A stretch of 64,000 bases of DNA, from contig NC_091285.1 in NCBI RefSeq assembly GCF_032444005.1, positions 293,508,001 to 293,572,000 on the forward strand, in the 5' to 3' direction. Positions within the stretch are counted from its first letter, which is position 1; each line of letters opens with the position of its first letter. This stretch comes from Ranitomeya imitator (taxonomy: Eukaryota). The translations under genes and the position numbers were made by a program. Of the stretch, positions 1,476 through 64,000 are shown piece after piece. Below the pieces are notes generated by a model. The model was not told the DNA's origin, made no database searches, and was given only the letters and a program-made list of their open reading frames with translations.

Positions 1476-1488
1476 GGAAGCAAAGGCC

Positions 1489-7989: not shown

Positions 7990-8525
7990 CAGCTCTGGCA
8001 AAAATGAAGAGACCACCACATAAAAACCCTGTCATGGGCAGCCCAATCTCCAGACCTGATCCCCATTGAAAACCTCTGGAATGTAACCAAGAGGATGATG
8101 GATAGTCACAAGCCATCAAACAAAAAAGAACTGCTTACATTTTTTGCGCCAGAAGCAGTGTGAAAGACTGGTGGAAAGCATGCCAAGACGCATGAAAGCT
8201 GTGATTAAAAATCATGGTTATTCCACAAAATATTGATTTCTGAAACTGAGTTAAAACATTAGTATTGTTGTTTCTAAATGATTATGAAGTTGTTTTCTTT
8301 GCATTATTTGAGGTCTGAAAGCACTGTTGTTTTTTTTTATTTTGACCATTTCTCCTTTTCTGAAAAAAAAAATACAAAATGTATTGCTTGGAAAGTTGGT
8401 GACATGTTATCAGAAGTTTATAGAATAAATGAACAATTTACATTTTACTCAAAAATATACCTATAAAGAGAAAAAAGAGAGAAACTGAAAATTTTGCAGT
8501 GGACTCTTAATTTTTGCCAGAGCTG
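7990..8525 (+). mobile_element. Internally deleted Tc1-like element (MITE-size)
   Basis: TIR CAGCTCTGGCAAAAAT/ATTTTTGCCAGAGCTG, TA on the left; retains SPDLxPIENLW-coding sequence; same derivative as 51779-52314. Confidence 0.85.
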
Positions 8526-13790: not shown

Positions 13791-14020
13791 NNNNNNNNNN
13801 NNNNNNNNNNNNNNNNNNNNNNNNNNNNNNNNNNNNNNNNNNNNNNNNNNNNNNNNNNNNNNNNNNNNNNNNNNNNNNNNNNNNNNNNNNNNNNNNNNNN
13901 NNNNNNNNNNNNNNNNNNNNNNNNNNNNNNNNNNNNNNNNNNNNNNNNNNNNNNNNNNNNNNNNNNNNNNNNNNNNNNNNNNNNNNNNNNNNNNNNNNNN
14001 NNNNNNNNNNNNNNNNNNNN
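13791..14020. other. Assembly gap (230 N)
   Basis: Run of N. Confidence 1.
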
Positions 14021-14759: not shown

Positions 14760-15610
14760 GCAGTGTGAAGCAGAAGGACTGTTAAGACAAATGAATCAGC
14801 TTGAAATTGTTATTAACACCACCTTGTGGAGTGACATCCTGCAAAGAACAGATGCTGCTAGTAAAAATCTACAACACGCAAAACTCGATCTAAACACTGC
14901 TGTGACGTCACTGACGAGCTTAAAAAACTATGTCGCATCAAAGCATGACTCCTTCAAAATTTATGAGAACAAGGCTAAGAGCTGTCAGGTTCATCTGAGT
15001 ATGTTCAGACGATAACTCGACACAGGCGTCGAAACGTGTCTCAATCCATTGGATTATGGTCATACAGAAGAAGTACAACTCAGCCCTTCTGAAAAATACA
15101 GAACAGAAGAAACAGAATTTCTTGGCTATCATTCATTTATTGCTTCTCTTGACCAACGTCTTCAAGCATATAAAGATATATCAAGCAAATTAAGCTTTTT
15201 TAGCCATCTGAAAGAACTGTCTTCAGGCGGGCTTAAGGCCACAGCAGAGCAACTCGTCAGGTCTTATTCAAATGACTTGGACATTACGTTTATCGATGAA
15301 CTGTGTCAGTTTGTAACATTTGCCAATTTATTCACAGACGAGGAGCCAAAAGATATCAGCATTGAACTTTTCATGTACAAGCTTATCATTGAAAAGGGTG
15401 CGCAGGACACTTTCCCAAATATTGAGATAGCTCTAAGGATGTATCTAATTTTGATGGTAACAAACTGCAGTGGTGAACGTTCCTTCTCAAAACTCAAGTT
15501 AGTTGAAAACCGATTAAAGACATCCATGAAGCAGGAACGACTTGTAAATTTGGCTATCATGAGCATCAAATTGGATTTTAGTGACATCATTAGTGATTTT
15601 GCAGCACAAG
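14760..15610 (+). pseudogene. hAT transposase C-terminal fragment (ZMYM1-like type) with hATC dimerisation domain
   Basis: FPNIEIALRMYLILMVTNCSGERSFSKLKLVENRLKTSMKQERL; frameshifted relative to the upstream block; possible element end CAGGCCTGGATTT at 12946. Confidence 0.85.
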
Positions 15611-16642
15611 ATGGATTTCTTCATCCCAGATATCATTTTAATCAGTATAGTATCAGCAATATGACAATTTCTGTAGTTTACTTAGCAAAATCCTGCTGAC
15701 ATGTTCACTTTGATTTCACACCTTTTGCAGTCTAACAATGAATTTGCAATAAGTTTTCACATAAATGTAGAATTTACAGCAACTTTGCAAATGATTTAAT
15801 ATTTCACAAATGAGTCATTAAGAATGACTGCACATCCAGGACTGATTTGCTATAAAGCTGGGATTTTAATACATTGATAATTAGAATTTTTAACTTTTTT
15901 ATCTGTAATAAATCATTAATTCTAAGATACTGTACATGATTATGAAAAAGCTATGACGACCATGTTATTTATACCACATTTATCAGAATGGCACATTTGG
16001 CATAATAAAATTGACTCAAATAGTGAGGCATGTTATGTACAATTCTGATCTGTTTCACATACACAAAATCATGTAATAGTTGGAGCACATGTCATGTTAG
16101 CTTTATTACAATTTTTTTAACAAATCTCCCAACAAATTTCATATATGATGTTTTTCTTTTCAACTGCTTGTGATATTGCATTGCTTGAAAGCTATTTTTA
16201 ATATTCATTTTTTAATTGAGTTTTTGTGCATTAATATTTTCTTTAGGCAATTTTCCATCCACACTTTATAATTGAGCAACCAATCATTTTATTCTGCATA
16301 CAGTATGGCAGTGTAATGTAACTGTATTTTCACTACATAAATTGTGGATGATAGAGATTAGCTTGTGTCACATTTGTCTCATATTCTATACCAATGAAAT
16401 ACCATATTTCAAAGCTGATGAAGACTTTGGTTGTTGAGTTTCTTCATGTGATCAAATTTTTCTTGCAATTCCATTTTAGCAGAGAATGTACCATATATGT
16501 CATGAATTATTTAGTTTGGAACAGATATTGAAAAAAAGTCATTCTTATTAAGGATGATGAAATTAGACGGTGGTTTATTCAACGCGTTTCAAGGTCAGTG
16601 CGACTCCTTCTTCAAGAATTCCACATACAACATGATGATGAG

Positions 16643-19600
16643 TGCTTTGAGTGCCACCCTGCTGTGAATATGGTTCTTCTTCCAAAACTGTCCTTTGGCT
16701 GGACAGTTGTTTGCTTGGCCACTGTTAGTACAGGAACCCACCCTCCAACCATGTATAGACAACTAGCCTGAAAATGATGTAAATGGTCCCTGTTCCTTCT
16801 CCTCTTCTTCCTGTGCCACCACCTCATCCTTCGTTGCCTGAAGCTTTTTTCAAGCAGGCATAGAAGTGGTATAGCAATGCTCATAATGATGTAATCACAG
16901 CTGGCCATGTTGGTGAAGTACCCTAAGCAGTGCAACATGGCACACATCTTGCATGGAGGCCCACTCGGTAGAAGTCATGTTATGCCACAGAGTGACTCAC
17001 TCATGCGTGCTGACGCTGAAACTCCACTATTGCCTGCTGCAGCTAACATGGTCTCTACAGCATATGCAAGGTAGAGTTCCACCTTGTGGGAATGTCACAT
17101 ATGAGGTGGTGAGTTGGAAGGCAGAAGTGATGTTGCAGTGCCGACAGGCTAACAGCATCAAGATGGGAATGCCGAAAGCGCATACAGGCGGCCTACATTT
17201 TCAGCAGCAGATCTGACAAATTGGGGTAAATTGTAAGGAAGCTCTGCACCAACAAATTCAACATATGCGCCAGGCAAGTGATGTGTGCCAAACTGGCTAG
17301 GCCAAGGGCTGTTATGAGATTTGACCTATTATCGCACAAAACCAGGCTGGGCTTGAGGTTCAGTGGCACCAACCACTTTGTTGTTTGATCCCCAAAAACA
17401 GCTACTGCGCAAAGTGGGATTTTTCCCCCACACAGATGAGTTTCAGAATAGACTGCTGTCGTTTCCCCTGGATGTTCTTAAGTGGGTGGTTCAGGTGTTT
17501 TGCTGATCAGATGAGAAGGAAGTCGAGGAATCGGCGTAGAAGGAGGAGGCAACATGGACAAATAAACGTCAAGCAATGCTTAGTGGTGGTAAGATATGCA
17601 GGGGACAGTTAGAGAGATGTAATGTCCCTGGCTATGCTTACTGGTCCACATATTGGTGGTTATGTGGACCTTGCCACTGATGGAGTAGCGCAGTGCATAT
17701 CTTATTTTGTCCACAACATGTATGAGCAAGGCAGGGATGGCCTGCCTGGAAAAGTAGTGGCGGCTGGGAATCGTGTACTGTGGGAAAGTTACTGGCATCA
17801 GTTTTATAATACTGTCCATTTCCACTAGCCATAATGGCAGAATTTCAAAGGCAGGAATTTTGAAATACTGTCGTTCAGGACCATGGCGCATGGATGGGTA
17901 GGGGGGTACTTTCTCTTTCTCTCTAGTGTTTGGGGGATGGACACCTGAATGCTTCCATGGGATGGGATGGAGATGCTCGGTGACACTGCTGGTGATGGTG
18001 TTCTCACATCTTCTCGTTACAGTGAGCCAGGTGGCCCTGTTGATTGGGAGCAGGAGGAAGAGGACGATAATGCAGCAGAAGAGGAGTCTCAGATCTTTCC
18101 TGTTTTTTTCAGGTGTGTGCTCCACTACAGCTCTTATTGTAAATTTAGATGCCTTGTCATGCATGTGGTGCTCAGATTCAGAATATTTATGCCTTGCTTC
18201 AGGCTCTGATGGCGCAGCGTGGAAGCCACCCGTCTCTAGTCGTCAGAACATTGCCTGAAAAAATGCCAGGCCAGGGAGCTCCTTTGAGCTGGCTTTCGTT
18301 TGCTTAGTTCCTTGGCACGGTGGGCAGTAGCAGTCGATGTACTGGCTGCTGTGCTTTTACTCCCTACTCCCTCTTTTGCTGTGCATCTGGGACAGCGTGG
18401 CCACTTCCCATTCTTCTAAACTGCGCACATCACACTGATGGCCTTCACTCCATGTGAGGTCTTGGAGGTGGTATATGCTTCAATATTTGTCTGAGACCTC
18501 CCACCAGACTAAGGCTTATGTTAATTAGTACTGGATCCTACATGCCCTTAAAACTCATCGGATTAGAGCCCGGGAGATGCATGTTTTAAAAATATTAGGT
18601 TTAGATTCCCATTAAAAAAGGTATACATTGTCATGGCTGTTTGGATCTCATGAATTGGCCAAATTGTGCACTAATTATCTTAATTTTCTAAGTACATTTA
18701 ATATAGCAATAAGACAGTCTAAACTTCATATTTTCAATGCTTACATAGATCTTAGAACTCATCGAGCGCTGCGATATTGTGTAATTTGTATACTAGGCAT
18801 TCAAAGCAGCATGCACCTGTTCATACTTGCTTTGTTTTGTTCAGTGGTGCCCGTCAGTGGTGTAAGTCTATCTCTTATATATCTGTTACATGTATGTCTG
18901 AACCCTCTGCCACAAGTTTTATTTATGTTGCAAGGTGTCACCATACTTGCACTGCAGACTGAGATTGGGACATGTGTCCTGTTCAACATTAGTGAATCTG
19001 TGACTTGTGGTTCTGCCCAGCCAAAGAAACGTTTCTTACTGCAGAGGATTGGTTATTACTTGTATTATTACTTGCATTGAGTTATCTGCTATGAGCTTTG
19101 GATAGAGCCACACCATATTAAACCCCCCTGCTAGTTATAGGTTGTTACTAACTCTGGTGTCCTGAATTGTGTACCCTGTATCTTGAATTACTTCCTTACC
19201 TTGGTTTGTGTTTCTGACTACCATAACTGCCTTACTCTTCTGCCCCTAACATTGACCTCCAGGTTTTCACCTACTTGCATCTTAACTATTCTTCACAAGA
19301 ATGCTCCACCATATAGTAGCCACACTGTGTACTATATATTTTTAAATTTGGGAATGCCACAAAACATTGGGAAAGGCAAATAGAATGAACAAACTGCGTT
19401 GGAGTATAACAATGACTGGGTGCGGCTGGTCTACTTTTATAGTCGGCCAAAGGTACAGACAAATCCTGTGAGATCCATGCCTGCATAATTTTAATGAATG
19501 TGAACTTGCCCAAGTTTGACTGTGGACAGGTGGATGCTTCTGTCTGTGATCACACCACCTGAGATGCTAAACACATGTTTCGACAGCACATTTGCCACAG

Positions 19601-22600
19601 GGCAGGCCAGCACCTACAAAATGTAAAGGACAAGCTCAGGCCATATGTCAACTTTGGAGACCAATCACGTGGAGACACCTACTCTTCCATCATGTTGTTG
19701 AAACGCTGGTGTCGGATGTTATAGTGTGCTGAGGAAGGTTTTCCACATTTCCGCCATGCTAACTCTCCTTTTCGTGATGGTAGCAGTGCTCCAGCTGTGT
19801 TGCTGAATTCCTCCTCCTCTGCCTTGTTCTTCCACTAATCACCCTTTGTCAGGAAGGAATGCTGTCAGCAGTGCATCTACCAGTGTGCACTTGTATTCCC
19901 ACATTTTCCAATCCTGCTCCAATGACAGAAGTTAGAATGGCACATTGTCCTTGAAGTGGGGATCTAGCAAGGAATCCACTCAGTAATCAGTCTTGGTAAC
20001 AATCCGGGTAACTCGGCGGTCATTGCACAGGCACAGAAACATGTACTGGCTTGTGTGCCAAACTGCTCAGAGGCAACAACAAGCTCTTCTCGGTGAGAGG
20101 TGTATTGTCTGGATTCACTGTATCCTCCACAGTGACTCTCCAATGATGCCTGTGAGCTGCTTTGAGTGCCACCCTGCTGTGAACATGGTTCTTCTTCCAA
20201 AACTGTCCTTTGGCTGGACAGTTGTTTGCTTGGCCACTGTTAGTACAGGAACCCACCCTCCAACCATGTATGGACAACTAGCCTGAAAATGATGTAAATG
20301 GTCCATGTTCCTTCTCCTCTTCTTCCTGTGCCACCACCTCATCCTTCGTCGCCTGAAGCTTTTTTCAAGCAGGCATAGAAGTGGTATAGCAATGCTCATA
20401 ATGATGTAATCACAGCTGGCCATGTTGGTGAAGTACCCTAAGCAGTGCAACATGGCACACATCTTGCATGGAGGCCCACTCGGTAGAAGTCATGTTATGC
20501 CACAGAGTGACTCACTCATGCGTGCTGACACTGAAACTCCACTATTGCCTGCTGCAGCTAACATGGTCTCTACAGCATATGCAAGGTAGAGTTCCACCTT
20601 GTGGGAATGTCACAAATGAGGTGGTGAGTTGGAAGGCAGAAGTGATGTTGCAGTGCTGACAGGCTAACAACATCAAGATGGGAATGCCGAAAGCGCATAC
20701 AGGCGGCCTACATTTTCAGCAGCAGCTCTGACAAATTGGGGTAAATTGTAAGGAAGCTCTGCACCAACAAATTCAACATATGCGCCAGGCAAGTGATGTG
20801 TGCCAAACTGGCTAGGCCAAGGGCTGTTATGAGATTTGACCTATTATTGCACAAAACCAGGCTGGGCTTGAGGTTCAGTGGCACCAACCACTTTGTTGTT
20901 TGATCCCCAAAAACAGCTACTGCGCAAAGTGGGATTTTTCCCCCACACAGATGAGTTTCAGAATAGACTGCTGTCGTTTCCCCTGGATGTTCTTAAGTGG
21001 GTGGTTCAGGTGTTTTGCTGATCAGATGAGAAGGAAGTCGAGGAATCGGCGTAGAAGGAGGAGGCAACATGGACAAATAAACGTCAAGCAATGCTTAGTG
21101 GTGGTAAGATATGCAGGGGACAGTTAGAGAGATGTAATGTCCCTGGCTATGCTTACTGGTCCACATATTGGTGGTTATGTGGACCTTGCCACTGATGGAG
21201 TAGCGCAGTGCATATCTTATTTTGTCCACAACATGTATGAGCAAGACAGGGATGGCCTGCCTGGAAAAGTAGTGGCGGCTGGGAATCATGTACTGTGGGA
21301 AACCTACTGGCATCAGTTTTATAATACTGTCCATTTCCACTAGCCATAATGGCAGAATTTCAAAGGCAGGAATTTTGAAATACTGTCGTTCAGGACCATG
21401 GCGCATGGATGGGTAGGGGGTACTTTCTCTTTCTCTCTAGTGTTTGGGGGATGGACACCTGAATGCTTCCATGGGATGGTATGGAGATGCTCGGTGACAC
21501 TGCTGGTGATGGTGTTCTCACATCTTCTCTTTACAGTGAGCCAGGTGGCCCTGTTGATTGGGAGCAGGAGGAAGAGGACAATAATGCAGCAGAAGAGGAG
21601 TCTCAGATCTTTCCTGTTTTTTTCAGGTGTGTGCTCCATTACAGCTCTTATTGTAAATTCAGATGCCTTGTCATGCATGTGGTGCTCAGATTCAGAATAT
21701 TTATGCCTTGCTTCAGGCTCTGATGGCGCAGCGTGGAAGCCACCCTTCTCTAGTCGTCAGAACATTGCCTGAAAAAATGCCAGGCCAGGGAGCTCCTTTG
21801 AGCTGGCTTTCGTTTGCTTAGTTCCTTGGCACGGTGGGCAGTAGCAGTCGATGTACTGGCTGCTGTGCTTTTACTCCCTACTCCCTCTTTTGCTGTGCAT
21901 CTGGGGCAGCGTGGCCACTTCCCATTCTTCTAAACTGCGCACATCACACTGATGGCCTTCACTCCATGTGAGGTCTCGGAGGGGGTATATGCTTCCATAT
22001 TTGTCTGAGACCTCCCATCAGACTAAGGCTTATGTTAATTAGTACTGGATCCTACATGCCCTTAAAACTCATCGGATTAGAGCCCGGGAGATGCATGTTT
22101 TAAAAATATTAGGTTTAGATTCCCATGAAAAAAGGTATACCTTGTCATGGCTGTTTGGCTCTCATGAATTGGCCAAATTGTGCACTAATTATCTTAATTT
22201 TCTAAGTACATTTAATATAGCAATAAGACAGTCTAAACTGCATATTTTCAATGCTTACATAGATCTTAGAACTCATCGAGCGCTGCGATATTGTGTAATT
22301 TGTATACTAGGCATTCAAAGCAGCTTGCACCTGTTCATACTTGCTTTGTTTTGTTCAGTGGTGCCCGTCAGTGGTGTAAGTCTATCTCTTATATATCTGT
22401 TACATGTATGTCTGAACCCTCTGCCACAAGTTTTATTTATGTTGCAAGGTGTCACCATACTTGCACTGCAGACTGAGATTGGGACATGTGTCCTGTTCAA
22501 CATTAGTGAATCTGCGACTTGTGGTTCTGCCCAGCCAAAGAAACGTTTCTTACTGCAGAGGATTGGTTATTACTTGTATTATTACTTGCATTGAGTTATC

Positions 22601-43046: not shown

Positions 43047-44675
43047 AAGCCAATATGCTAAATGACTTTTTTTCATCAGTATTTACAAAAGAAAATCCCA
43101 TGGCAGACAATATGATCAGTGATAACAAAAATTCCACATTAAGTGTCACCTGCTTAACCCAGCAGGAAGTATGGCGGCGTGTAAAAATCACTAAAATTGA
43201 CAAATCTCCGGGCCCGGACGGGATACACCCTCGAGTACTGCAGGAATTAAGTACAGTCATTGATAGACCATTATTTTTAATCTTTAAAGACTCCATAATA
43301 ACAGGGTCTGTGCCAACAGGACGGGCGTATAGCAAATGTGGTGCCAATATTCAAAAAGGGGACAAAAACCGAACTCGGTAATTATAGGCCAGTAAGCTTA
43401 ACCTCTACTGTGGGTAAAATCCTGGAGGGCATTCTAAGGGATGCTATACTGGAGTATCTAAAGAGGAATAACCTCATGACCCAGTATCAGCACGGGTTTA
43501 CTAGGGACCGTTCATGTCAGACTAATTTGATCAGCTTCTATGAAGAGGTAAGTTCCGGACTGGACCAAGGGAACCCAGTAGATGTATTGTATATGGACTT
43601 TTCAAAAGCTTTTGATACGGTGCCACAGAAAAGGTTGATACATAAAATGAGAATAATGGGAATTGGGGAAAATATGTGTAAGTGGGTTGAAAGCTGGCTC
43701 AGGGATAGGAAACAAAGGGTGGTTATTAATGGAACACACTTGGACTGGGTCGCAGTTAGCAGTGGGGTACCACAGGGGTCAGTATTGGGCCCTCTTCTTT
43801 TTAACATATTTATTAATGACGTTGTAGGGGGCATTCAGAGTAGAATTTTAATATTTGCAGATGACACTAAACTCTGCAGGGTAATCAATACAGGGGAGGA
43901 CAAGTTTATATTACAGGATGATTTATGTAAAATAGAAGCTTGGGCTGATAAATGGCAAATGAGCTTTAATGGGGATAAATGTAAGGTCATGCACTTGGGT
44001 AGAAGTAATAAGATGTATAACTATGTGCTTAATTCTAAAACTCTGGACAAAACCGTCAATGAAAAAGACCTGGGTGTATGGGTGGATGACAAACTCATAT
44101 TCAGTGGCCAGTGTCAGGCGGCTGCTACTAAGGCAAATAAAATAATGGGATGCATTAAAAGAGGCATAGATGCTCATGAGGAGAATATAATTTTACCTCT
44201 ATACAAGTCAATTGTTCGACCACACTTAGAATACTGTGCACAGTTCTGGTCTCCGGTGTATAAGAAAGACATAGCTGAACTGGAGTGGGTTCAGAGAAGA
44301 GCAACCAAGGTAATTAGAGGACTGGGGGGTCTGCAATACCAAGATAGGTTATTACACTTGGGGCTATTTAGTTTGGAAAAACAAAGACTAAGGGGTGATC
44401 TTATTGTAATGTATAAATATATGAGGGGACAGTACAAAGACCTTTCTGATGATCTTTTTAATCATAGACCTGAGACAGGGACAAGGGGGCATCCTCTACG
44501 TCTGGAGGAAAGAAGGTTTAAGCATAATAACAGACGCGGATTCTGTACTGTAAGAGCAGTGAGACTATGGAACTCTCTGCCATATGATGTTGTAATGAGT
44601 GATTGGTTACTTAAATTTAAGAGGGGACTGGATACCTTTCTGGAAAAGTATAATGCTATAGGGTATATATACTAG
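43047..44675 (+). pseudogene. CR1 ORF2 reverse transcriptase region with one frameshift near 43317
   Basis: NDFFSSVFTKE and KSPGPDGIHPRVL in one frame, PIFKKG onward in another. Confidence 0.9.
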
Positions 44676-44893: not shown

Positions 44894-45725
44894 TAAGTGC
44901 TGGAATTGGGGCATCTTAGAGATGTGCCTTTTCTGGGGCAGCTGATTGCTGATAGCCCCTTCCTAGGCTATTAATATCAGCCCGAGCTGTCTGCATAGCC
45001 TTTGCTGGTTATTAATTATGGGGGAACACCACATCATTTTTTGGGTCGGTCCCCCATTTTAACCCCTTTACCCCCAAGGGTGGTTTGCACGTCAATGACC
45101 AGGCCAATTTTTACAATTCTGACCACTGTCCCTTTATGAGGTTATAACTCCGAAATGCTTCAACGGATCCTGGTGATTCTGACATTGTTTTCTCGTGACA
45201 TATTGTACTTCATGATAGTGGTAAAATTTCTTTGATAGTACCTGCGTTTATTTGTGAAAAAAACAGAAATTTGGCGAAAATTTTGAAAATTTCGCAATTT
45301 TCAAACTTTGAATTTTTATGCAATTAAATCACAGAGATATGTCACACAAAATACTTAATAAGTAACATTTCCCACATGTCTCCTTTACATCAGCATAATT
45401 TTGGAACCAATTTTTTTTTTTGTTAGGGAGTTATAAGGGTTAAAAGTTGACCAGCAATTTCTCATTTTTACAACACCATTTTTTTTTAGGGACCACGTCT
45501 CATTTGAAGTCATTTTGAGGGGTCTATATGATAGAAAATGCCCAAGTGTGACACCATTCTAAAAACTGCACCCCTCAAGGTGCTCAAAACCACATTCAAG
45601 AAGTTTATTAACCCTTCAGGTGTTTAATAGGAATTTTTGGAATGTTTAAATAAAAATGAACATTTAACTTTTTTACACAAAAAATTTACTTCAGCTCCAA
45701 TTTGTTTTATTTTACCAAGGGTAAC

Positions 45726-47890
45726 AGGAGAAATTGGACCCAAAAAGTTGTTGTCCAATTTGTCCTGAGTACGCTGATACCCCATATGTGGCAGTAAACC
45801 ACTGTTTGGGCGCATGGGAGAGCTCGGAAGGGAAGGAGCGCTATTTGACTTTTCAATGCAAAATTGACAGGAATTGAGATGGGACGCCATGTTGCGTTTG
45901 GAGAGCCACTGATGTGCCTAAACATTGAAACCCCCCACAAGTGACACCATTTTGGAAAGTAGACCCCCTAAGGAACTTATCTGGATGTGTGGTGAGCACT
46001 TTGACCCACCAAGTGCTTCACAGAAGTTTATAATGCAGAACCGTAAAAATAAAAAATCATATTTTTTCACAAAAATTATATTTTTGCCCCCAATTTTTTA
46101 TTTTTCCAAGGGTAAGAGAAGAAATTGGACCTTAAAAGTTGTTGTCCAATTTGTCCTGAGTACGCTGATACCCCATATGTGGCAGTAAACCACTGTTTGG
46201 GCGCATGGGAGAGCTCGGAAGGGAAGGAGCGCAGTTAGACTTTTCAATGCAAAATTGACAGAAATTGAGATGGGACGCCATGTTGCGTTTGGAGAGCCAC
46301 TGATGTGCCTAAACATTGAAACCCCCCACAAGTGACACCATTTTGGAAAGTAGACCCCCTAAGGAACTTATCTAGAGGTGTGGTGAGCACTTTGACCCAC
46401 CAAGTGCTTCACAGAAGTTTATAATGCAGAACCGTAAAAATAAAAAATCATATTTTTTCACAAAAATTATATTTTTGCCCCCAATTTTTTATTTTTCCAA
46501 GGGTAAGAGAAGAAATTGGACCTCAAAAGTTGTTGTCCAATTTGTCCCGAGTACGCTGATACCCCATATGTGGCAGTAAACCACTGTTTGGGCGCATGGG
46601 AGAGCTCGGAAGGGAAGGAGCGCCGTTTGACTTTTCAATGCAAAATTGACAGGAATTGAGATGGGACGCCATGTTGCGTTTGGAGAGCCACTGATGTGCC
46701 TAAACATTGAAACCCCCCACAAGTGACACCATTTTGGAAAGTAGACCCCCTAAGGAACTTATCTGGATGTGTGGTGAGCACTTTGACCCACCAAGGGCTT
46801 CACAGAAGTTTATAATGCAGAGCCATAAAAATAAAACAAAATTTTTTTCCCACAAAAATTATTTTTTAGCCCCCAGTTTTGTATTTTCCCTAGGGTAACA
46901 GGAGAAATTGGACCCCAAAAGTTGTTGTCCAATTTGTCCTGAGTACGCTGATACCCCATATGTGGGGGGGAACCACCGTTTGGGCGCATGGGAGGGTTCG
47001 GAAGGGAAGGAGCGCCATTTGGAATGCAGACTTAGATGGAATGGTCTGCAGGCGTCACATTGCGTTTGCAGAGCCCCTAATGTACCTAAACAGTAGAAAC
47101 CCCCCACAAGTGACACCATTTTGGAAAGTAGACCCCCTAAGGAACTCATCTTGATGTGTTGAGAGCTTTGAACCCCCAAGGATTTCACTACAGTTTATAA
47201 CGCAGAGCCATGCAAATAAAAAATATTTTTTTTTCCACAAAAATTATATTTTAGCCCCCAGTTTTGTATTTTTCCAAGGTTAGCAGGAGAAATTGGACCC
47301 TAAATGTTGTTGTCCAACTTGTCCTGAGTACGCTGATACCCGATATGTGGGGGGGAACCACCGTTTGGGCGCATGGGAGGGCTCGGAAGGGAAGGAGCAT
47401 CATTTGGAATGCAGACTTAGATGGATTGGTCTGCAGGCGTCACATTGCGTTTGCAGAGCCCCTAATGTACCTAAACAGTAGAAACCCCCCACAAGTGACC
47501 CCATATTGGAAACTAGACCCCTCAATGAACTTATCTAGATGTGTTGTGAGAACTTTGAACCCCCAAGTATTTCACTACAGTTTATAACGCAGAGCCGTGA
47601 AAATAAAAAATCTTTTTGTTTTCCCACAAAAATTATTTTTTAGCCCCCAGTTTTGTATTTTCCCAAGGTAACAGGAGAAATTGGTCCACAAAAGTTGTTG
47701 TCCAATTTGTCCTGAGTACGCTGATACCCCATATGTTGGGGTAAACCCCTGTTTGGGCACACAGGAGAGCTCGGAAGGGAAGGAGCACTGTTTTACTTTT
47801 TCAACGCAGAATTGGCTGGAATTGAGATCGGACGCCATGTCGTGTTTGGAGAGCCCCTGATGTGCCGAAACAGTGGAAACCCCCCAATTA
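45726..47890. repeat. Internal tandem array of a ~385-393-bp unit (about 5.5-6 copies)
   Basis: GAAATTGG(A/T)CC anchor recurring at roughly 390-bp spacing; repeated ORF calls at 45707, 46098 and 46489. Confidence 0.92.
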
Positions 47891-48049: not shown

Positions 48050-48346
48050 NNNNNNNNNNNNNNNNNNNNNNNNNNNNNNNNNNNNNNNNNNNNNNNNNNN
48101 NNNNNNNNNNNNNNNNNNNNNNNNNNNNNNNNNNNNNNNNNNNNNNNNNNNNNNNNNNNNNNNNNNNNNNNNNNNNNNNNNNNNNNNNNNNNNNNNNNNN
48201 NNNNNNNNNNNNNNNNNNNNNNNNNNNNNNNNNNNNNNNNNNNNNNNNNNNNNNNNNNNNNNNNNNNNNNNNNNNNNNNNNNNNNNNNNNNNNNNNNNNN
48301 NNNNNNNNNNNNNNNNNNNNNNNNNNNNNNNNNNNNNNNNNNNNNA
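48050..48346. other. Assembly gap (297 N)
   Basis: Run of N. Confidence 1.
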
Positions 48347-50124: not shown

Positions 50125-51733
50125 CAGGTCCTTCTCAAAAAATTAGCATATAGTGTTAAATTTCATTATTTACCATAATGTAATGATTACAATTAAACTT
50201 TCATATATTATAGATTCATTATCCACCAACTGAAATTTGTCAGGTCTTTTATTGTTTTAATACTGATGATTTTGGCATACAACTCCTGATAACCCAAAAA
50301 ACCTGTCTCAATAAATTAGCATATCAAGAAAAGGTTCTCTAAACGACCTATTACCCTAATCTTCTGAATCAACTAATTAACTCTAAACACATGCAAAATA
50401 TACCTGAGGCTTTTATAAACTCCCTGCCTGGTTCATTACTCAAAACCCCCATCATGGGTAAGACTAGCGACCTGACAGATGTCAAGAAGGCCATCATTGA
50501 CACCCTCAAGCAAGAGGGTAAGACCCAGAAAGAAATTTCTCAACAAATAGGCTGTTCCCAGAGTGCTGTATCAAGGCACCTCAATGGTAAGTCTGTTGGA
50601 AGGAAACAATGTGGCAGAAAACGCTGTACAACGAGAAGAGGAGACCGGACCCTGAGGAAGATTGTGGAGAAGGACCGATTCCAGACCTTGGGGAACCTGA
50701 GGAAGCAGTGGACTGAGTCTGGTGTGGAAACATCCAGAGCCACCGTGCACAGGCGTGTGCAGGAAATGGGCTACAGGTGCCGCATTCCCCAGGTAAAGCC
50801 ACTTTTGAACCATAAACAGCGGCAGAGGCGCCTGACCTGGGCTACAGAGAAGCAGCACTGGACTGTTGCTAAGTGGTCCCAAGTACTTTTTTCTGATGAA
50901 AGCAAATTTTGCATGTCATTCGGAAATCAAGGTGCCAGAGTCTGGAGGAAGACTGGGGAGAAGGAAATGCCAAAATGCCTGAAGTCCAGTGTCAAGTACC
51001 CACAGTCAGTGATGGTGTGGGGTGCCACGTCAGCTGCTGGTGTTGGTCCACTGTGTTTCATCAAGGGCAGGGTCAATGCAGCTAGCTATCAGGAGATTTT
51101 GGAGCACTTCATGCTTCCATCGGCTGAAATGCTTTATGGAGATGAAGATTTCATTTTTCAGCACGACCTGGCACCTGCTCACAGTGCCAAAACCACTGGT
51201 AAATGGTTTACTGACCATGGTATTACTGTGCTCAATTGGCCTGCCAACTCTCCTGACCTGAACCCCATAGAGAATCTGTGGGATATTGTGAAGAGAAAGT
51301 TGAGAGACGCAAGACCCAACACTCTGGATGAGCTTAAGGCCGCTATTGAAGCATCCTGGGCCTCCATAACATCTCAGCAGTGTCACAGACTGATTGCCTC
51401 CATGCCACGCCGCATTGAAGCAGTCATTTCTGCCAAAGGATTCCCGACCAAGTATTGAGTGCATAACTGAACATTATTATTTGTTGGTTTTTTTGTTTGT
51501 TATTAAAAAACACTTTTATTTGATTGGATGGGTGAAATATGCTAATTTATTGAGACAGGTTTTTTGGGTTATCAGGAGTTGTATGCCAAAATCATCAGTA
51601 TTAAAACAATAAAAGACCTGACAAATTTCAGTTGGTGGATAATGAATCTATAATATATGAAAGTTTAATTGTAATCATTACATTATGGTAAATAATGAAA
51701 TTTAACACTATATGCTAATTTTTTGAGAAGGAC

Positions 51734-51736: not shown

Positions 51737-51778
<42 letters not shown>

Positions 51779-51781
<3 letters not shown>

Positions 51782-52311
51782 CACTGGCAATAATTAAGAG
51801 GCCACCACATCAAAACCCCATCATGGGTAGCCCAATCTCCAGACCTGAACCCCATTTAAAACCTCTGGAATGTAATCAAGATGATGTTGGATAGTCACAA
51901 TCCATCAAACAAAGAACAACTGCTTAAATTTTTGTGCCAGAAGCAGTGTGAAAGACTGATGGAAAGCATGCCAAGACGCATGAAAACTGTGATTAAAAAT
52001 CATTGTTATTCCACAAAATATTGATTGCTGTACTCTCCTTAGTTAAAACATTAGTATTGTTGTTTCTAAATGGTTATGAACTTGTTTTCTTTGCATTATT
52101 TGAGGCCTGAAAGCACTGGGGTTTTTAAATTTTGACCACTTTTCTTTGTTAGAAAAAAAAATACAAAATTTATTGCTTGGACATTTAGAGACATGTTGTC
52201 AGAAGTTTATAGAATAAAAGAACAGTTTAAATTTTACTCAAAAATATACTTATAAAGAGAAAAAACAGAGAAACTGAACATTTTGCAGTGGTCTCTTAAT
52301 TTTTGTCAGAG

Positions 52312-52314
<3 letters not shown>
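51779..52314 (+). mobile_element. Internally deleted Tc1-like MITE (second copy of the 7990-8525 derivative)
   Basis: Same TIRs and same internal deletion junction; flanked by (TA)n. Confidence 0.85.
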
Positions 52315-59033: not shown

Positions 59034-60388
59034 TTCCCCCTTAGTTAAGAACAGTACTCCGGGACTGTGGGACGATAACATTTTGAAATAACAATTAATA
59101 TGTACAGAGTCTTAAAAATGAAAAGTTACAAAAACCACTCAAGGAAACAAAAATAGAGTTCTGTAAAAAGTCACTTCAAATAGCGTCCATTAATACAGTT
59201 CTATCCTTGAAGGTACTAGGAAAGGCACTGCACTTTGTGTCCAAGAATTTAGCTCCATTTTTCCAACGGAGTTACCAATATAAAGTCTAAAGAAAGTTCA
59301 AAAAGCAGTCTTTCCGGAGCTTTGATTTAGTGTCTCCGGGCTGATAAAACGTTCAAGAATATGCAATAAGTTCATGCAGACAAGTCTCTGTAGGTACTGG
59401 GCTTAAACGTTGCAGAATGATAACAATGACTACAGTTTTATAGTTGGTAATCCGCATACCTGGCCGGTAATTGACCCTGGGTACTACGCTGTGATCTACG
59501 TAATAGCGGTGTCTCTTCATGTGGTGTACTACTGTCTACTGCGGATGTAGTATCTGCCCGCTCTGCTAAAGATAATTCCATGACTATGGAGTTGGCAAGT
59601 CCACAGTGAATGGGATTACTCTGATCAGGAATCTGTTCTTCCTGGCCTGGAACCTCCCGTAGTACGGGGTCAGCCTCTTCCTGTCTTGGGACTTCTGGTA
59701 TTGGGTTCGGTGTTGGGTAAAAGGCCACCATGGGAACCACTACTGCACCATGGTATGTTAGTAGGGTTTTGGGAAAGTCTCCTATACAGGTGTGATACAT
59801 TTCCTCTTCTTTTTCCTTTACTGGTTGGACCTGCAAGGGTTGAATAACTTCTGGTTCTGGCTGGACAACTTCTGGCTCTTTCAATGCTTCCGGACATAAT
59901 TTAAGATTGTCTCTTGACACTAGTACAGATGTTAAGCCTCCGTTTTTGCTAATGAGACACATTTTAGGATTATCCATTCTTGTTGGTAAAACTGTGTAGG
60001 GTACGGCTTCCCACTGATTGTCTAGTTTATTGGTTCGACGATTTCTCTTGAGCACTTGGTCACCCGGTCTTAATGGGGTCGCTAGAGCATTCTGGTTGAA
60101 AGTTCGCTCTTGTCTTTCTCTAGTTTGCTGAAGGCTTCTTTCCACACTCTCTTGCACTTGGCGATACTGCTTTTGCCGTATGATATCCCAATTGGAGTCT
60201 TGAACTTCTGCGTCTGGTTTCAGAATTCCCATTTCTAGATCGATTGGTAATTGGCCGGGTCTTGCACGCATAAGGTAAGCTGGGGTGCAGTTGGTGGAGC
60301 TCACCGGGACATGATTATACAGATCCACCAAGTCAGGCAATTTCTCTGGCCATTGATTCCTTTCTGTCTCAGGTAAAGTCTTTAGTAG

Positions 60389-62253
60389 TATCTCTAAACA
60401 GCAAAAGCACAAAAAGAGGATTCAGAGATCCTCCAAAAATTAGAAAAAACAGCAGCAAAACACGGCAGAGGTTCTTACCTGCCTAGGCCTCCAAACAAAT
60501 GCACTAACAGGATGCAGTGGACCCATGTGGTAAAATAGAAACACAGGTGCAGCATAACCGATGACACAGCCACTTACCAGCTACCAAACTAATGGAGGGG
60601 GTGGCTGCTTGGCACAAGCTGCACATAAAAACTTGCATGTGGCGCTGTTCACACAATGGAGATGCACAGCATCCAGGCAGGACTAGTAGTGACACCCTTC
60701 TATTAGATCAGGCGGGCCTGCCCAGCGCTATCCAAATGCACCCCATGTGCACAGACACCACAGTTTACAAGCAGAAAATGGGCCCAACTGCACCCCGAAA
60801 AAAAGTGCAAAAAACACATAAAAAAAAAATATTATGTGAGGTATTGGTTTATATTCTGGCCAAAATACGCAAGCTCATAACCCACATCAAGGGTCCTCCC
60901 GCTTATGAGTCCTATCTCTAAACAGCAAAAGCACAAAAAGAGGATTCAGAGATCCTCCAAAAATTAGAAAAAACAGCAGCAAAACACGGCAGAGGTTCTT
61001 ACCTGCCTAGGCCTCCAAACAAATGCACTAACAGGATGCAGTGGACCCATGTGGTAAAATAGAAACACAGGTGCAGCATAACCGATGACGCAGCCACTCA
61101 CCAGCTACCAAACTAATGGAGGGGGTGGCTGCTTGGCACATAGCTGCACATAAAAACTTGCATGTGGCGCTGTTCATACAATGGAGATGCACAGCATCCA
61201 GGCAGGCCTAGTAGTGACACCCTTCTATTAGATCAGGCGGGCCTGCCCAGCGCTATCCAAATGCACCCCATGTGCACAGACACCACAGTTTACAAGCAGA
61301 AAATGGGCCCAACTGCACCCCGAAAAAAAGTGCAAAAAACACATAAAAAAAAATATTATGTGAGGTATTGGTTTATATTCTGGCCAAAATACGCAAGCTC
61401 ATAACCCACGTCAAGGGTCCTCCCGCTTATGAGTCCTATCTCTAAACAGCAAAAGCACAAAAAGAGGATTCAGAGATCCTCCAAAAATTAGAAAAAACAG
61501 CAGCAAAACACGGCAGAGGTTCTTACCTGCCTAGGCCTCCAAACAAATGCACTAACAGGATGCAGTGGACCCATGTGGTAAAATAGAAACACAGGTGCAG
61601 CATAACCGATGACGCAGCCACTCACCAGCTACCAAACTAATGGAGGGGGTGGCTGCTTGGCACATAGCTGCACATAAAAACTTGCATATGGCGCTGTTCA
61701 CACAATGGAGATGCACAGCATCCAGGCAGGCCTAGTAGTGACACCCTTCTATTAGATCAGGCGGGCCTGCCCAGCGCTATCCAAATGCACCCCATGTGCA
61801 CAGACACCACAGTTTACAAGCAGAAAATGGGCCCAACTGCACCCCGAAAAAAAGTGCAAAAAACACATAAAAAAAAAAATATTATGTGAGGTATTGGTTT
61901 ATATTCTGGCCAAAATACGCAAGCTCATAACCCACGTCAAGGGTCCTCCCGCTTATGAGTCCTATCTCTAAACAGCAAAAGCACAAAAAGAGGATTCAGA
62001 GATCCTCCAAAAATTAGAAAAAACAGCAGCAAAACACGGCAGAGGTTCTTACCTGCCTAGGCCTCCAAACAAATGCACTAACAGGATGCAGTGGACCCAT
62101 GTGGTAAAATAGAAACACAGGTGCAGCATAACCGATGACGCAGCCACTCACCAGCTACCAAACTAATGGAGGGGGTGGCTGCTTGGCACATAGCTGCACA
62201 TAAAAACTTGCATGTGGCGCTGTTCACACAATGGAGATGCACAGCATCCAGGC
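60389..62253 (-). mobile_element. Non-coding tandem-repeat insertion: 3.55 copies of a 524-526-bp unit with a 13-bp TSD
   Basis: Unit starts at 60389, 60913, 61437 and 61963; AAGTCTTTAGTAG at 60376-60388 and 62254-62266. Confidence 0.95.
61360..61434 (-). ncRNA. Candidate atypical HDV-like self-cleaving ribozyme (also at ~60836-60910 and ~61886-61960)
   Basis: Manual fold: P1 CTCATAA/TTATGAG, P3 CCC/GGG, L3 TTGACGT, P4 GTATTTT/AGAATAT, J4/2 CCAA; P2 imperfect. Confidence 0.4.
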
Positions 62254-64000
62254 AAGTCTTTAGTAGGTCTATTACAATATGGTTCATCTTCTCGCATAAG
62301 CCGTTTGTTTGTGGATGATAGGCCGTCGTCCGGATCTTTTTGCAACCATACATATTACAGAATTCTCTGAAGATCTCTGATTCAAAGGCTGTACCTTGGT
62401 CGGTGAGAACCTGTTCTGGATATCCATGGGGTCTACAAAAGTACGTTTGGAACGCTTTGGCTGCTGTTTTTGCTGTCAGATCTTTTACGGGTCCTACTAC
62501 CAAGAAGCGTGAATAATGGTCCACGATGGTCAAGGCATAGACATAGCCGGACCGGCTTGGTGTCAACTTCACGTGGTCTATGGCTACAAGTTCAAGTGGT
62601 TGTTTGGTGATAATGGGCTGCAGTGGTGCTCTTTGGTTCTTTTGATCGTTTCTTCTGAGGTTGCACGGGCCACAGTTTCTGCACCACTGTTCGATTGATT
62701 TTCTCATCCCGACCCAATAAAATCTTTCTCTTAGAAGTACTTCTAACTTTTTCCAACCGAAGTGACCAGCACCATTATGGTAAGCTTCAAGGACCATCTT
62801 CACATCTTGTTTAGGCACGATAATCTGCCAAACCAATTCATGTGTTTTCGGATTGGTGTACCTTCTACAGAGCTTCCCTTGATACAGGAACATTTTGCCT
62901 CTCTCTTTCCAGAGTTGATGTGTCTCTTCTGGGGCATCCTTATTGGGATATGCACTTTGCTCAGTCAGCAGTTCCTTCACCAACTTCACAGCCGGATTGC
63001 TGTCTTTGGTGTCAGCCCATCTATGGTGTGCTAACGGATTAAAATTCACCTCTTGTTGTTTCTGATAGGTACTTGACTGATGATGTTTTGCCTTGGGATG
63101 ATGGAAGGCTGGTAGTTCAATTTCTTCAAGCTCCCCCGTTTCTTCTTCTACATCTCTCAAGTGTGGCATCCGGGATAGGGCATCGGCATTTCCATTCTTG
63201 CGACCTGCTCGATACTTGATTATGAAGTTGTAATTAGATAACCGGGCTATCCATCGCTGTTCTAACGCACCTAATTTGGCTGTGTCCAGATGGGTCAACG
63301 GATTGTTGTCAGTATAGACAATAAATTCTGCAGCGGCCAGATAGTGTTTGAAACGTTCAGTCACAGCCCAAACTACTGCCAGTAGTTCCAATTTGAAGGA
63401 GCTGCAATTTTCTGAATTTCTTTCAGTTGGCCGGAGCTTTCTACTTGCAAAGGCGATGACTTTCTCCCGACCTTCTTGCTTTTGTGACAGCACCGCTCCT
63501 AGTCCCACATTACTGGCATCGGTGTAGAGGATGAAAGGTTGATGGTAATCTGGGTATGCCAGAACCTCTTCTCAGGTTAGTGCCTTCTTTAGTTGTTCAA
63601 AGGAGTCTTCCCTTTCATCGTTCCACTGAAAAGGAGGGTTTCGGTTTGAAGGTTTCTTCGTCTGCCCTACCAAGGCGTCTTGCAAGGGTGCTGCCAACTT
63701 GGTAAATCCTTTTATAAATCTGCGATAGTAACCCACCAATCCCAGGAATTGCCTCACTTCTTTTGCGTTGGTAGGTCTTGGCCAATCCCTTATGGCGCTT
63801 ATTTTCTCGGGATCCGGTGCTACTCCCTCCGAACTCACGATGTGTCCCAGGTACTGTACCTTTGGCTTGAGAAGGTGACATTTGGAAGGCTTGATTTTCA
63901 TGCCATACCTGGATAAGGCTTCGAACACTTCTGCCAGGTCTTTTAAGTGTTGTTTGTAAGTCTTTGAGTAGACGATCACATCATCTAGGTACAGGAGGAC

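What the first reader, a model, noticed from the sequence alone, without database searches (positions are those of the whole stretch)
61360..61437. Candidate atypical HDV-like ribozyme at each monomer junction, with the cleavage site at the insert's 3' end
Seen (minus strand): gga-CTCATAA-GCGGGAGGA-CCC-TTGACGT-GGG-TTATGAG-CT-tgc-GTATTTT ggcc AGAATAT-aaa-CCAA-TACCTCAC, which follows the HDV order P1, P2, P3, L3, P3', P1', J, P4, J4/2, P2'. L3 differs from the CPEB3 loop UUCACGU at one base (G for C), and the base after P1' is C instead of G, so the P1.1 pair is swapped but retained. U20, G25 and a CNAA J4/2 are present. The insert ends at AGATA, 1-3 nt upstream of the predicted scissile bond. 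Weak points: P2 has only a 4-bp core (GAGG/CCTC), and P1 opens with C-G or A-C instead of G-U. Inference: self-cleavage defines the monomer, and a descriptor that fixes the C-G P1.1 pair would miss it.
Basis: partly seen in the sequence, partly recalled or inferred. Interest (0 to 1): 0.9.

Follow-up and report, generated by a model that had tools for sequence, protein, structure and literature searches.

The report
HDV-like ribozyme candidate in tandem retroelement
A 524-base repeat that copied itself into another mobile element carries, at the start of each unit, an RNA fold matching the hepatitis-delta-type self-cutting ribozyme; related copies in several species support the fold, but cutting has not been shown.

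Summary
On the minus strand, 61433-61360 threads onto the HDV-like double pseudoknot, and the motif recurs at 61959-61886 and 60909-60836. It belongs to 3.56 tandem 524-526-bp monomers (60389-62253). These were retroposed with a 13-bp target duplication into the integrase domain of a Ty3/gypsy pol gene; an empty-site contig confirms this.

A descriptor loose enough to admit the motif is expected about 1e-3 times per window by chance. Contigs from four organisms improve the fit:
- The family consensus turns the weak 4-bp P2 into 6 bp and a P4 wobble into U-A.
- P1 shows compensatory changes at three pairs and P3 at one.
- The L3 core, the P1.1 partners, and C, A, A of J4/2 do not vary, while J1/2, the N of CNAA and linkers do.
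- In the most distant organism only this block still aligns.

The retroposed 3' end lies 3 nt upstream of the predicted cut.

Against:
- There is no cleavage or RNA-end data, and no Rfam hit.
- The first pair is C-G, not G.U, and P1.1 is reversed and shows no covariation.
- One abundant variant breaks P1 and P3.

Verdict: probably (about 0.6) a genuine atypical HDV-like ribozyme in a retrozyme-like non-autonomous retroelement. That would be a new variant of a known kind.

The parts
60389..62253 (-). Retroposed insert: 1865 bp, 3.56 head-to-tail monomers of 524-526 bp. It is 5'-truncated at 62253 and its 3' end is ...AGAGATA at 60389.
   Evidence: Searches show four monomers differing only by singleton changes, about 0.4%. 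In one search an empty-site contig skips 60376-62253.
62254..62266 (-). Upstream copy of the 13-bp target-site duplication CTACTAAAGACTT. The adjoining 5' junction shows microhomology with the monomer (ctacta..g.c.t).
   Evidence: Sequence. The joint has 13 letters that fit both sides.
60376..60388 (-). Downstream copy of the 13-bp target-site duplication.
61360..61433 (-). Candidate HDV-like ribozyme, middle copy. Helices: P1 61433-61427 with 61404-61398; P2 61424-61419 with 61365-61360; P3 61417-61415 with 61407-61405; P4 61392-61386 with 61381-61375. L3 is 61414-61408. P1.1 is G61412-C61397. J4/2 is C61371 C61370 A61369 A61368. The predicted cut is between 61434 and 61433.
61886..61959 (-). 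Candidate ribozyme, first copy in RNA sense; identical to the middle copy.
60836..60909 (-). Candidate ribozyme, last full copy. L3 reads UUGAUGU: the C preceding the conserved G is changed to U at a CpG.
61434..61447 (-). The last 14 nt of the preceding monomer (GUUUAGAGAUAGGA), just upstream of the predicted cut. It is conserved together with the ribozyme block in the most distant organism. The retroposed 3' end falls inside it, after AGAGAUA.
   Evidence: organism J contigs fit 61357-61447..
61463..61531 (-). Two short stem-loops near the monomer's 3' end (GGCAGG..CCUGCC-like and GGAGGAUCUCUGAAUCCUC). I infer these may be a recognition site for a partner reverse transcriptase.
   Evidence: One search shows the stem-loops in all four monomers. 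The function is inference only.
59438..64000 (-). Host element: the pol gene of a Ty3/gypsy-type LTR retrotransposon (RT, RNase H, H2C2 zinc finger, integrase core). The insert interrupts the integrase core in the same orientation.
   Evidence: One search gives Pfam matches for ORFs 62078-63508 and 63572-63979. One search gives the reading frame around the insert.

Best explanation
The minus-strand RNA of this 524-nt repeat carries an atypical HDV-like (double-pseudoknot) self-cleaving ribozyme at the 5' end of each unit.

Proposed mechanism: the array is transcribed as part of a longer RNA, here probably the gypsy element's own transcript, which runs the same way. The ribozymes cut 5' of C61433. 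Each cut releases a unit that begins with the ribozyme (5'-OH) and ends ...AGAGAUAGGA with a 2',3'-cyclic phosphate. A reverse transcriptase supplied in trans by a non-LTR or Penelope-like element copies such RNA at a nicked target. The RNA is either an incompletely cut multimer or a ligated circle read round and round. This produces tandem copies, a 13-bp target duplication, a fixed 3' end and a 5' truncation joined through microhomology.

Shown:
- The insertion anatomy.
- The fit to the fold.
- The comparative support for P1, P2 and P3 and for the invariant core.

Inferred:
- Catalysis.
- The RNA strand.
- Circularisation.
- The identity of the partner enzyme.
For: (1) All elements of the fold occur in the right order and spacing. 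P1 is 7 Watson-Crick pairs abutting P3'. P3 is 3 bp. L3 is 7 nt, U-U-G-A-C-G-U, with the conserved U...CG. One P1.1 pair is possible. P4 is a hairpin. J4/2 reads CCAA and P2' follows it. The features were compared with the descriptor in PMC6326823.

(2) The chance expectation is about 1e-3 per window for the window copy and about 8e-11 per nt for the consensus.

(3) The family consensus repairs the weak points. Position 61423 is U in 98-100% of contig depth in runs X1 and X9, and in 91-100% in X30 and X20, which makes P2 GUGAGG/CCUCAC. Position 61380 is A in 67-90% of depth where it is covered, which makes a U-A pair in P4.

(4) There are compensatory changes in P1 and P3.
- 61430 A>G goes with 61401 U>C, and 61429 U>C goes with 61402 A>G. 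All four changes sit in one contig of organism G.
- 61428 A>G goes with 61403 U>C. Both are about 30% of depth in organism B and at most 1% in organism A.
- In P3, 61417 C>U goes with 61405 G>A, assigned to one organism J contig by their identical depth (10.3).

(5) No variant reaches 4% at L3 positions 61413-61411 and 61409, at C61397, or at C61371, A61369 and A61368. In contrast, these do vary: the N of CNAA, the last L3 base, J1/2 (also in length) and the linkers beside P4.

(6) In organism J only 61357-61447 still aligns. In all four runs alignments break within 3 nt of the end of P2'.

(7) The retroposed 3' end is 3 nt from the predicted cut, a coincidence of about 1% by chance. A second contig with an unrelated flank ends at the same nucleotide.

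(8) No hammerhead core is present and no other Rfam ribozyme matches on either strand.

(9) The monomer RNA is unusually structured: z = -4.5 in minus sense against -3.4 in plus sense.
Against: - There is no cleavage assay. All runs were available only as contigs, so RNA ends and strand could not be read.
- The first P1 pair is C-G, not the G.U or G-C of the standard descriptor.
- The P1.1 pair is reversed (G in L3, C after P1'), and both partners are invariant, so there is no covariation for it.
- About 3 nt lie between P1.1 and P4 and 3 nt between P4 and the catalytic C, more than the 0-2 reported for R2 ribozymes.
- No Rfam HDV-type model matches even at E<=10 on 106 nt.
- One high-depth organism J contig (record 16, depth 54.3) has three uncompensated changes in P1' and P3'.
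- A nested helix, 61431-61425 with 61398-61392, competes with P1. In the G-C variant the nested fold containing it reaches -21.9 kcal/mol.
- Two of the P1 changes are at CpG sites and could recur without selection.
- Most covariation rests on marginal frequencies, not on linked sequences.
- The 3-nt offset between the insert end and the predicted cut needs an extra assumption.
- The window's own copies carry the P2 mismatch, and one carries an L3 change, so they may be poor cutters.
Confidence: 0.6

Rival explanations
1. The conserved block is a structured but non-catalytic RNA or DNA element of the repeat, and the likeness to the HDV fold is coincidental. Examples would be a hairpin bound by the partner reverse transcriptase, or a packaging or promoter element. 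The monomer ends would then be set by where reverse transcription starts.
For: The covariation in P1 and P3 proves only a hairpin. P2 has no double compensatory change and P1.1 has none at all. A competing nested helix is as stable as the ribozyme fold. Rfam finds nothing. The first pair and P1.1 are not canonical. The insert ends 3 nt before the predicted cut, and 14 nt upstream of the cut are conserved as well.
Against: A plain hairpin does not explain several features together. A 6-bp complement to the bulge lies exactly after an invariant C-N-A-A. The U...CG loop is invariant. The conserved block ends at the last base of P2' in four organisms. The joint chance rate of these features is very low. 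The window copy and an organism B subfamily keep P1 but not the competing helix.
Confidence: 0.27
2. The functional RNA is the plus strand. The constant terminus TATCTCTAAAC... would be its 5' end, set by a promoter or an unrecognised ribozyme lying upstream. The block would then be a 3'-terminal tail like those of SINEs and LINEs.
For: In plus sense the block follows an A-rich stretch and ends the unit, as SINE tails do. The plus strand also folds better than shuffles, z = -3.4. If the common P1' variant UUACGAG sits with CUCAUAA, that gives A.C on the minus strand but G.U on the plus strand; linkage is unknown.
Against: Target-primed insertions keep the 3' end and lose the 5' end. In plus sense this insert would be complete at its 5' end and cut mid-unit at its 3' end. 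The frequent A61421>G change keeps P2 only on the minus strand, as G.U. No ribozyme family matches the plus strand. The minus strand folds more stably.
Confidence: 0.08
3. It is an ordinary satellite or segmental duplication that happens to contain a chance match. No RNA function is involved.
For: A loose descriptor is expected to give tens of chance hits in a genome of several Gb.
Against: The array is a discrete insertion with a target duplication and an empty site. The family is highly repeated in several organisms. The block is the best conserved part, and its variation follows the helices.
Confidence: 0.05

Closest known systems
HDV-like ribozymes at the 5' end of non-LTR retrotransposons and their non-autonomous derivatives (R2, RTE, Baggins, L1Tc/NARTc, R2 and R2/R1 SIDEs)
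   Same: Both place a double-pseudoknot ribozyme at the 5' end of a retroposed unit. It frees the unit from a co-transcript that the element does not promote itself. Both show a target duplication, 5' truncation and a fixed 3' end. In both, J1/2 and P4 vary while the core does not. The cut need not coincide with the DNA junction (PMC3414825, PMC3774820, PMC6765202).
   Different: Here the units sit head to tail in multi-copy inserts with a ribozyme at every joint. No partner element sharing the ends was found in the window. The first pair is C-G and the P1.1 pair is reversed. No Rfam HDV-type model matches.
Animal non-LTR retrozymes (tandem repeats with type I hammerhead ribozymes)
   Same: Both are short non-coding units in tandem, flanked by target duplications longer than 4 bp. 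Both are very abundant and patchily shared among related species, with strongly structured unit RNA. In both, self-cleavage would leave ends that a tRNA ligase can join into circles (PMC7229834, 10.64898/2026.07.22.740005).
   Different: There is no hammerhead core on either strand. The candidate ribozyme is of the HDV type. The unit of 524 nt is longer than the 170-400 nt reported. Circular RNA was not tested.
Mammalian CPEB3 ribozyme
   Same: L3 has the same length and, from recall of the CPEB3 sequence, near-identical letters; the paper read here gives only U20, C22, A23 and G25. P1.1 has one strong pair next to a U-U. J4/2 is four nucleotides of the form C-N-A-A (PMC4836649).
   Different: CPEB3 is a single-copy intronic element of mammals with a G1.U36 wobble and a C22-G pair. 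Here the pair is G-C the other way round, the first pair is C-G, and the setting is a repeat family. The Rfam CPEB3 model does not match. The likeness is best read as convergence on the same fold.

Membership tests
HDV-like self-cleaving ribozymes | P1 of about 7 bp whose 3' strand directly follows P3' | tested here: met
   P1 is CUCAUAA/UUAUGAG, 7 Watson-Crick pairs. Compensatory changes occur at pairs 4, 5 and 6.
HDV-like self-cleaving ribozymes | 3-bp P3 closing a 7-8-nt L3 with the conserved U...C-G (U20, G25) | tested here: met
   CCC/GGG closes UUGACGU. No variant reaches 4% at the U-G-A and G positions. One organism J contig (linked by identical depth) has a compensated P3 pair.
HDV-like self-cleaving ribozymes | P1.1: L3 nucleotides pair with the two bases after P1' (canonically C-G) | tested here: inconclusive
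   One pair is possible, but reversed (G61412-C61397), next to a U-U as in CPEB3. Both partners are invariant, so there is no covariation.
HDV-like self-cleaving ribozymes | P2 pseudoknot of at least about 5 bp between the stretch before P3 and the 3' end | tested here: met
   The window copies have 4 bp, a mismatch, then 1 bp. The family consensus has 6 bp, GUGAGG/CCUCAC, at -10.6 kcal/mol. Only wobble-compatible changes were seen; there is no double compensation.
HDV-like self-cleaving ribozymes | J4/2 with the catalytic C followed by N-R-A | tested here: met
   J4/2 is CCAA, with CUAA in 19-36% of depth. C, A and A are invariant.
HDV-like self-cleaving ribozymes | G at +1 forming a G.U (or G-C) pair at the cleavage site | tested here: not met
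   Position +1 is C61433, paired with G61398, and it is invariant in all runs. The standard descriptor fixes G1-Y.
HDV-like self-cleaving ribozymes | Site-specific self-cleavage 5' of P1, dependent on the J4/2 cytosine and on divalent ions | not testable with these tools
   This needs a transcription and cleavage assay, or raw RNA reads. Only contigs were served.
Animal non-LTR retrozymes | Tandem non-coding units inserted with a target duplication longer than 4 bp | tested here: met
   There are 3.56 units, a 13-bp duplication and an empty-site contig.
Animal non-LTR retrozymes | Type I hammerhead ribozyme in each unit | tested here: not met
   There is no CUGANGA core in the array and no hammerhead match at E<=10.
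Animal non-LTR retrozymes | Unit-length linear and circular RNA in tissues | not testable with these tools
   Runs guessed to be RNA hold family contigs, including one 527-nt contig of which about 200 nt fit the array. Contigs cannot show circles, ends or strand.
Non-autonomous non-LTR elements with a 5' HDV-like ribozyme (SIDE/NARTc type) | 3' end shared with, and recognised by, an autonomous partner element | tested here: inconclusive
   The 3' tail occurs only in the array within this window, so no partner was found here. The rest of the genome was not searchable.
CPEB3 ribozyme | Sequence and structure match to the curated family model; single-copy intronic locus | tested here: not met
   There is no Rfam match. 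The sequence is a high-copy repeat.

The most novel reading that the evidence does not exclude
A retrozyme-like family of tandem non-coding retroelements, abundant in several related animal genomes, uses an HDV-type ribozyme instead of a hammerhead. The ribozyme has a natural core variant (C-G first pair, reversed P1.1) that standard descriptors and Rfam models cannot see. Its unit RNAs circularise and are copied round and round by a borrowed reverse transcriptase.
Probability: 0.3. Interest if true: 0.75.

Novelty: new variant of a known kind. Interest (0 to 1): 0.62.

Why it matters
If the cut is real, three things follow.
- It extends the retrozyme way of life (tandem, self-cutting, possibly circular RNA parasites of retrotransposons) from hammerheads to the HDV fold.
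- It supplies a natural test of two features usually treated as fixed in that fold: the G at +1 and the C-G polarity of P1.1.
- It shows that descriptor and covariance-model searches miss whole high-copy families.

It would also give a worked example of a ribozyme-bearing parasite sitting in sense orientation inside an LTR retrotransposon and using its transcript.

Tried and rejected
- **Rfam.** Searched at gathering score on the whole window, at E<=10 on 6 kb, and on the 106-nt block alone. There were no matches of any family on either strand.
- **Hammerhead.** No core motif is present in the array. A tRNA-derived SINE head was also ruled out.
- **Further family sequences for a linked covariation test.** Exact-pattern scans of metagenome and viral contigs found nothing. 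No other copy or 3' tail exists in the window. A covariance model or R-scape-type test was therefore not possible, and the covariation rests on the per-position tables.
- **Nested minimum-free-energy folding of the block.** This is uninformative: z = 0.6 on the minus strand and -1.0 on the plus strand. It cannot represent pseudoknots.
- **Shifting P1 outward so that the cut coincides with the insert end (G61436 as +1, G.U first pair).** Rejected. It needs a 10-bp helix with an A.C mismatch and consumes the P1.1 bases, which the fold's geometry does not allow (inference from PMC3774820).
- **A competing nested helix (61431-61425 with 61398-61392) as the true target of the covariation.** Rejected as the main structure, because the window copy and the organism B subfamily preserve P1 and not this helix.
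- **Taxon of the host.** It could not be narrowed through the protein atlas.
Full report
**What is there**

The window is soft-masked, CpG-depleted eukaryotic DNA full of mobile elements. On the minus strand, 60389-62253 is a head-to-tail array of 3.56 monomers of 524-526 bp. The four monomers differ only by singleton changes, about 0.4%, several of them at CpG sites.

The array interrupts the integrase core domain of a Ty3/gypsy-type pol gene that runs the same way. It is flanked by a 13-bp direct duplication, CTACTAAAGACTT, at 62254-62266 and 60376-60388. A 3180-nt contig in public run X15 carries the same gypsy sequence but skips exactly 60376-62253, with 13 letters fitting both sides. This is the empty site, so the array is one discrete insertion of 1865 bp.

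In minus sense the insert starts in mid-monomer at a stretch of microhomology with the target (ctacta..g.c.t). It ends at ...GCTGTTTAGAGATA. This is the pattern left by target-primed reverse transcription: a fixed 3' end and a truncated 5' end joined by microhomology.

**The observation**

It recurs at 61959-61886 and at 60909-60836, and the last of these has CG>TG in the loop. Mapped on the HDV fold, the elements are:

| Element | Coordinates (minus strand) | Sequence or note |
|---|---|---|
| P1 | 61433-61427 with 61404-61398 | 7 Watson-Crick pairs |
| J1/2 plus P2 5' strand | 61426-61418 | |
| P3 | 61417-61415 with 61407-61405 | |
| L3 | 61414-61408 | UUGACGU |
| P1.1 | G61412 with C61397 | beside a U-U |
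| P4 | 61392-61386 with 61381-61375 | |
| J4/2 | 61371-61368 | CCAA |
| P2 3' strand | 61365-61360 | |

I wrote a descriptor just loose enough to admit this: any Watson-Crick P1.1 pair, any first pair, P2 of at least 4 bp and P4 of at least 5 bp. It hits only the two intact copies on either strand of the window. In first-order Markov sequence with the window's composition, the 5' half occurs at 1.2e-6 per nt and the 3' half at 5.9e-3 per trial. That gives about 7e-9 per nt, or about 1e-3 per window. The descriptor was fitted afterwards, so the true look-elsewhere cost is larger. A multi-gigabase genome would still hold tens of chance hits at this stringency, so the fit alone is not enough.

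**Comparative evidence**

The family is very abundant in several coded organisms: small skims of 5-30 million letters already hold 40-60% of its words. I laid contigs of four runs (organisms A, B, G and J) on 61330-61470.

- Position 61423 is U rather than G in 91-100% of depth in all four runs (98-100% in the two deep DNA runs). P2 is then GUGAGG/CCUCAC, six Watson-Crick pairs at -10.6 kcal/mol as a duplex.
- Position 61380 is A in 67-90% of depth in the three runs that cover it, turning a U.G in P4 into U-A.
- At consensus quality (P2 of at least 6 bp, P4 of at least 7 bp) the chance rate falls to about 8e-11 per nt.

Second, P1 covaries at three pairs.

| Pair | Changes | Where seen |
|---|---|---|
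| 61430-61401 | A>G with U>C | one organism G contig (record 11), together with the next pair |
| 61429-61402 | U>C with A>G | same contig; it reads CUCGCAA/UUGCGAG where the window reads CUCAUAA/UUAUGAG |
| 61428-61403 | A>G with U>C | both about 30% of depth in organism B, both at most 1% in organism A |

Loose ends show further 5' strands (CUCGCAA, CUCACAA) lying behind J1/2 stretches of different length and sequence. That is why many alignments break at 61418-61422.

Third, one organism J contig (record 14) appears to carry both 61417 C>U and 61405 G>A, a compensated P3 pair. The two changes are linked to that contig by their identical depth of 10.3, which is an inference.

Fourth, the variation follows the pattern expected of the fold.
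- No variant reaches 4% at L3 61413-61411 and 61409, at C61397, or at C61371, A61369 and A61368.
- The N of CNAA (C or U), the last L3 base, J1/2 and the linkers beside P4 vary freely.
- The common P2 changes (A61421>G, C61362>U) keep pairing as G.U on the minus strand only.

Fifth, in organism J only 61357-61447 still aligns at 80% identity. In all four runs alignments break within 3 nt of 61360, the last base of P2'.

**Limits of that evidence**

- Apart from the two single-contig cases, linkage is unknown. The tables give marginal frequencies weighted by contig depth.
- The 61430 and 61401 changes are at CpG sites and could recur without selection.
- One organism J contig of high depth (record 16, 54.3) has 61402 A>C, 61403 U>C and 61405 G>C without partners. 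This breaks two P1 pairs and one P3 pair.
- P2 shows no double compensation, and P1.1 shows no variation at all.
- A nested helix, 61431-61425 with 61398-61392, competes with P1. In the G-C variant the nested fold containing it reaches -21.9 kcal/mol, similar to the sum for the ribozyme fold. However, the window copy compensated in P1' rather than in this helix, and the organism B subfamily disrupts the helix while keeping P1. I therefore read it as an alternative conformer, not the conserved structure.
- Rfam gives nothing on either strand, even at E<=10 on the 106-nt block alone. There is no close sequence relative among curated HDV-type families. Those models do not encode the pseudoknots and are known to miss divergent members, so this counts against kinship with a named family more than against the fold.

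**Position in the element**

The predicted cut is 5' of C61433. The retroposed insert ends at the equivalent of 61437, 3 nt upstream. A hit falling within 3 nt of that end by chance has a probability of about 1% for a 524-nt unit.

A second contig in run X15 joins the same terminus (...TAG|TATCTCTAAAC on the plus strand) to 243 nt of unrelated sequence (loose end at 60386). That sequence is absent from this window. At least two insertions therefore appear to share this end, although with only contig tables a divergent family variant cannot be excluded.

Moving the cut to the insert end would need a 10-bp P1 with an A.C mismatch and would use up the P1.1 bases. I rejected that option. In R2 elements the ribozyme's cut and the DNA junction often differ, because the reverse transcriptase sets the junction (PMC3774820). 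A 3-nt offset is therefore tolerable, but it does require that assumption.

The 14 nt upstream of the cut are conserved with the block. Two small stem-loops lie 25-95 nt before the unit's 3' end. These are candidates for the enzyme's recognition site, by inference only.

**Which strand**

Four points favour the minus strand.
- The insertion polarity: a fixed end at AGAGATA and a truncated opposite end with microhomology.
- The G.U-only changes in P2.
- The greater stability of the unit RNA in minus sense: -191.9 kcal/mol, z = -4.5, against -151.1 kcal/mol, z = -3.4.
- The absence of any ribozyme match on the plus strand.

None of these is proof. All runs were available only as contigs, so strand, ends and circles could not be read.

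**Mechanism proposed**

The array has no evident promoter and lies in sense inside a gypsy element. Ribozyme-bearing RTE and Baggins elements are likewise reported to rely on co-transcription downstream of LTR elements (PMC6765202).

Co-transcription followed by cleavage at each ribozyme would release 524-526-nt units with a 5'-OH and a 2',3'-cyclic phosphate. These are substrates for the tRNA ligase that circularises hammerhead retrozyme RNAs (PMC7229834). Either an incompletely cut multimer or a circle copied repeatedly would give several near-identical units in one insertion, as seen here. The 13-bp duplication points to a nicking endonuclease of a non-LTR or Penelope-like partner. No partner sharing the tail is present in the window.

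**Comparison with what is known**

The element works like the 5' HDV-like ribozymes of non-LTR retrotransposons and of their short derivatives, the SIDEs and NARTc (PMC3414825, PMC3383444). Its genomic habit is that of animal retrozymes, which are defined by hammerheads.

It fails two membership features. It lacks the G at +1 of the HDV descriptor, and it lacks the hammerhead of retrozymes. Its L3 and P1.1 resemble CPEB3, but it is not a CPEB3 family member. Three full-text searches found no report of tandem, retrozyme-like repeats carrying an HDV-type ribozyme. The library does not hold the original 2009-2011 surveys, so an earlier description cannot be excluded.

**Verdict**

I put about 0.6 on a genuine, or recently genuine, HDV-like self-cleaving ribozyme. 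I put about 0.27 on a conserved structured element that does not cut, and the rest on plus-strand or chance readings. The window's own copies carry a P2 mismatch, and one carries an L3 change, so they may be weak even if the family master copy is active. If real, it is a new variant of a known kind.

Noticed in passing
window 45596-47800 (+): A second tandem array of about 5.6 units of 385-392 bp lies about 0.9 kb downstream of a reverse-transcriptase ORF (43338-44675, Pfam RVT_1). It has no Rfam match, and my HDV descriptor does not hit it. It contains CTGATGTG...TTGAAAC, which is not a proper hammerhead core.
   Followed up: partly
window 1278-6585 (+): An apparently complete Ty3/gypsy element. 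It has 199-bp direct repeats at 1278-1476 and 6387-6585, gag, protease-RT and RNase H-integrase-chromodomain ORFs, and a 26-bp tandem repeat (about 14 copies) at 6036-6397 just before the 3' repeat.
   Followed up: partly
window 61431-61425 with 61398-61392 (-): A 7-bp helix competes with P1 and P1.1. It reads CGCAAGC/GCUUGCG in the G-C variant and forms 6 of 7 pairs in the window copy. It could be an off-state of the candidate ribozyme, like the alternative pairings known for HDV.
   Followed up: partly
run X15, contig of 527 nt (record 15) laid on 62038-62234: A contig of about monomer length with high word depth (887) lies in a run guessed to be RNA. Only about 200 nt of it fit the array at 80% or more. 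It suggests an expressed, diverged subfamily, or a collapsed tandem or circular form.
   Followed up: no
window 60386-60391 and the second insertion seen: Both insertion sites read ...TAG|TATCTC on the plus strand (AGAGATA|CTA in minus sense). This may be a target preference of the nicking enzyme, or 3 nt that belong to the element. Two sites are too few to tell.
   Followed up: no
window 16643-18201 and 20158-21715; 7984-8524 and 51773-52313: There are long direct repeats. One pair is 98-99% identical at 3.5 kb spacing. Another is 81-95% identical at 43.8 kb spacing, probably copies of other mobile elements. A Tc1/mariner transposase ORF lies at 50391-51458 and a hAT dimerisation domain at 15049-15699.
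   Followed up: no
window 13791-14020 and 48050-48345: Two runs of N (230 and 296 bases). They were left as they are.
   Followed up: no
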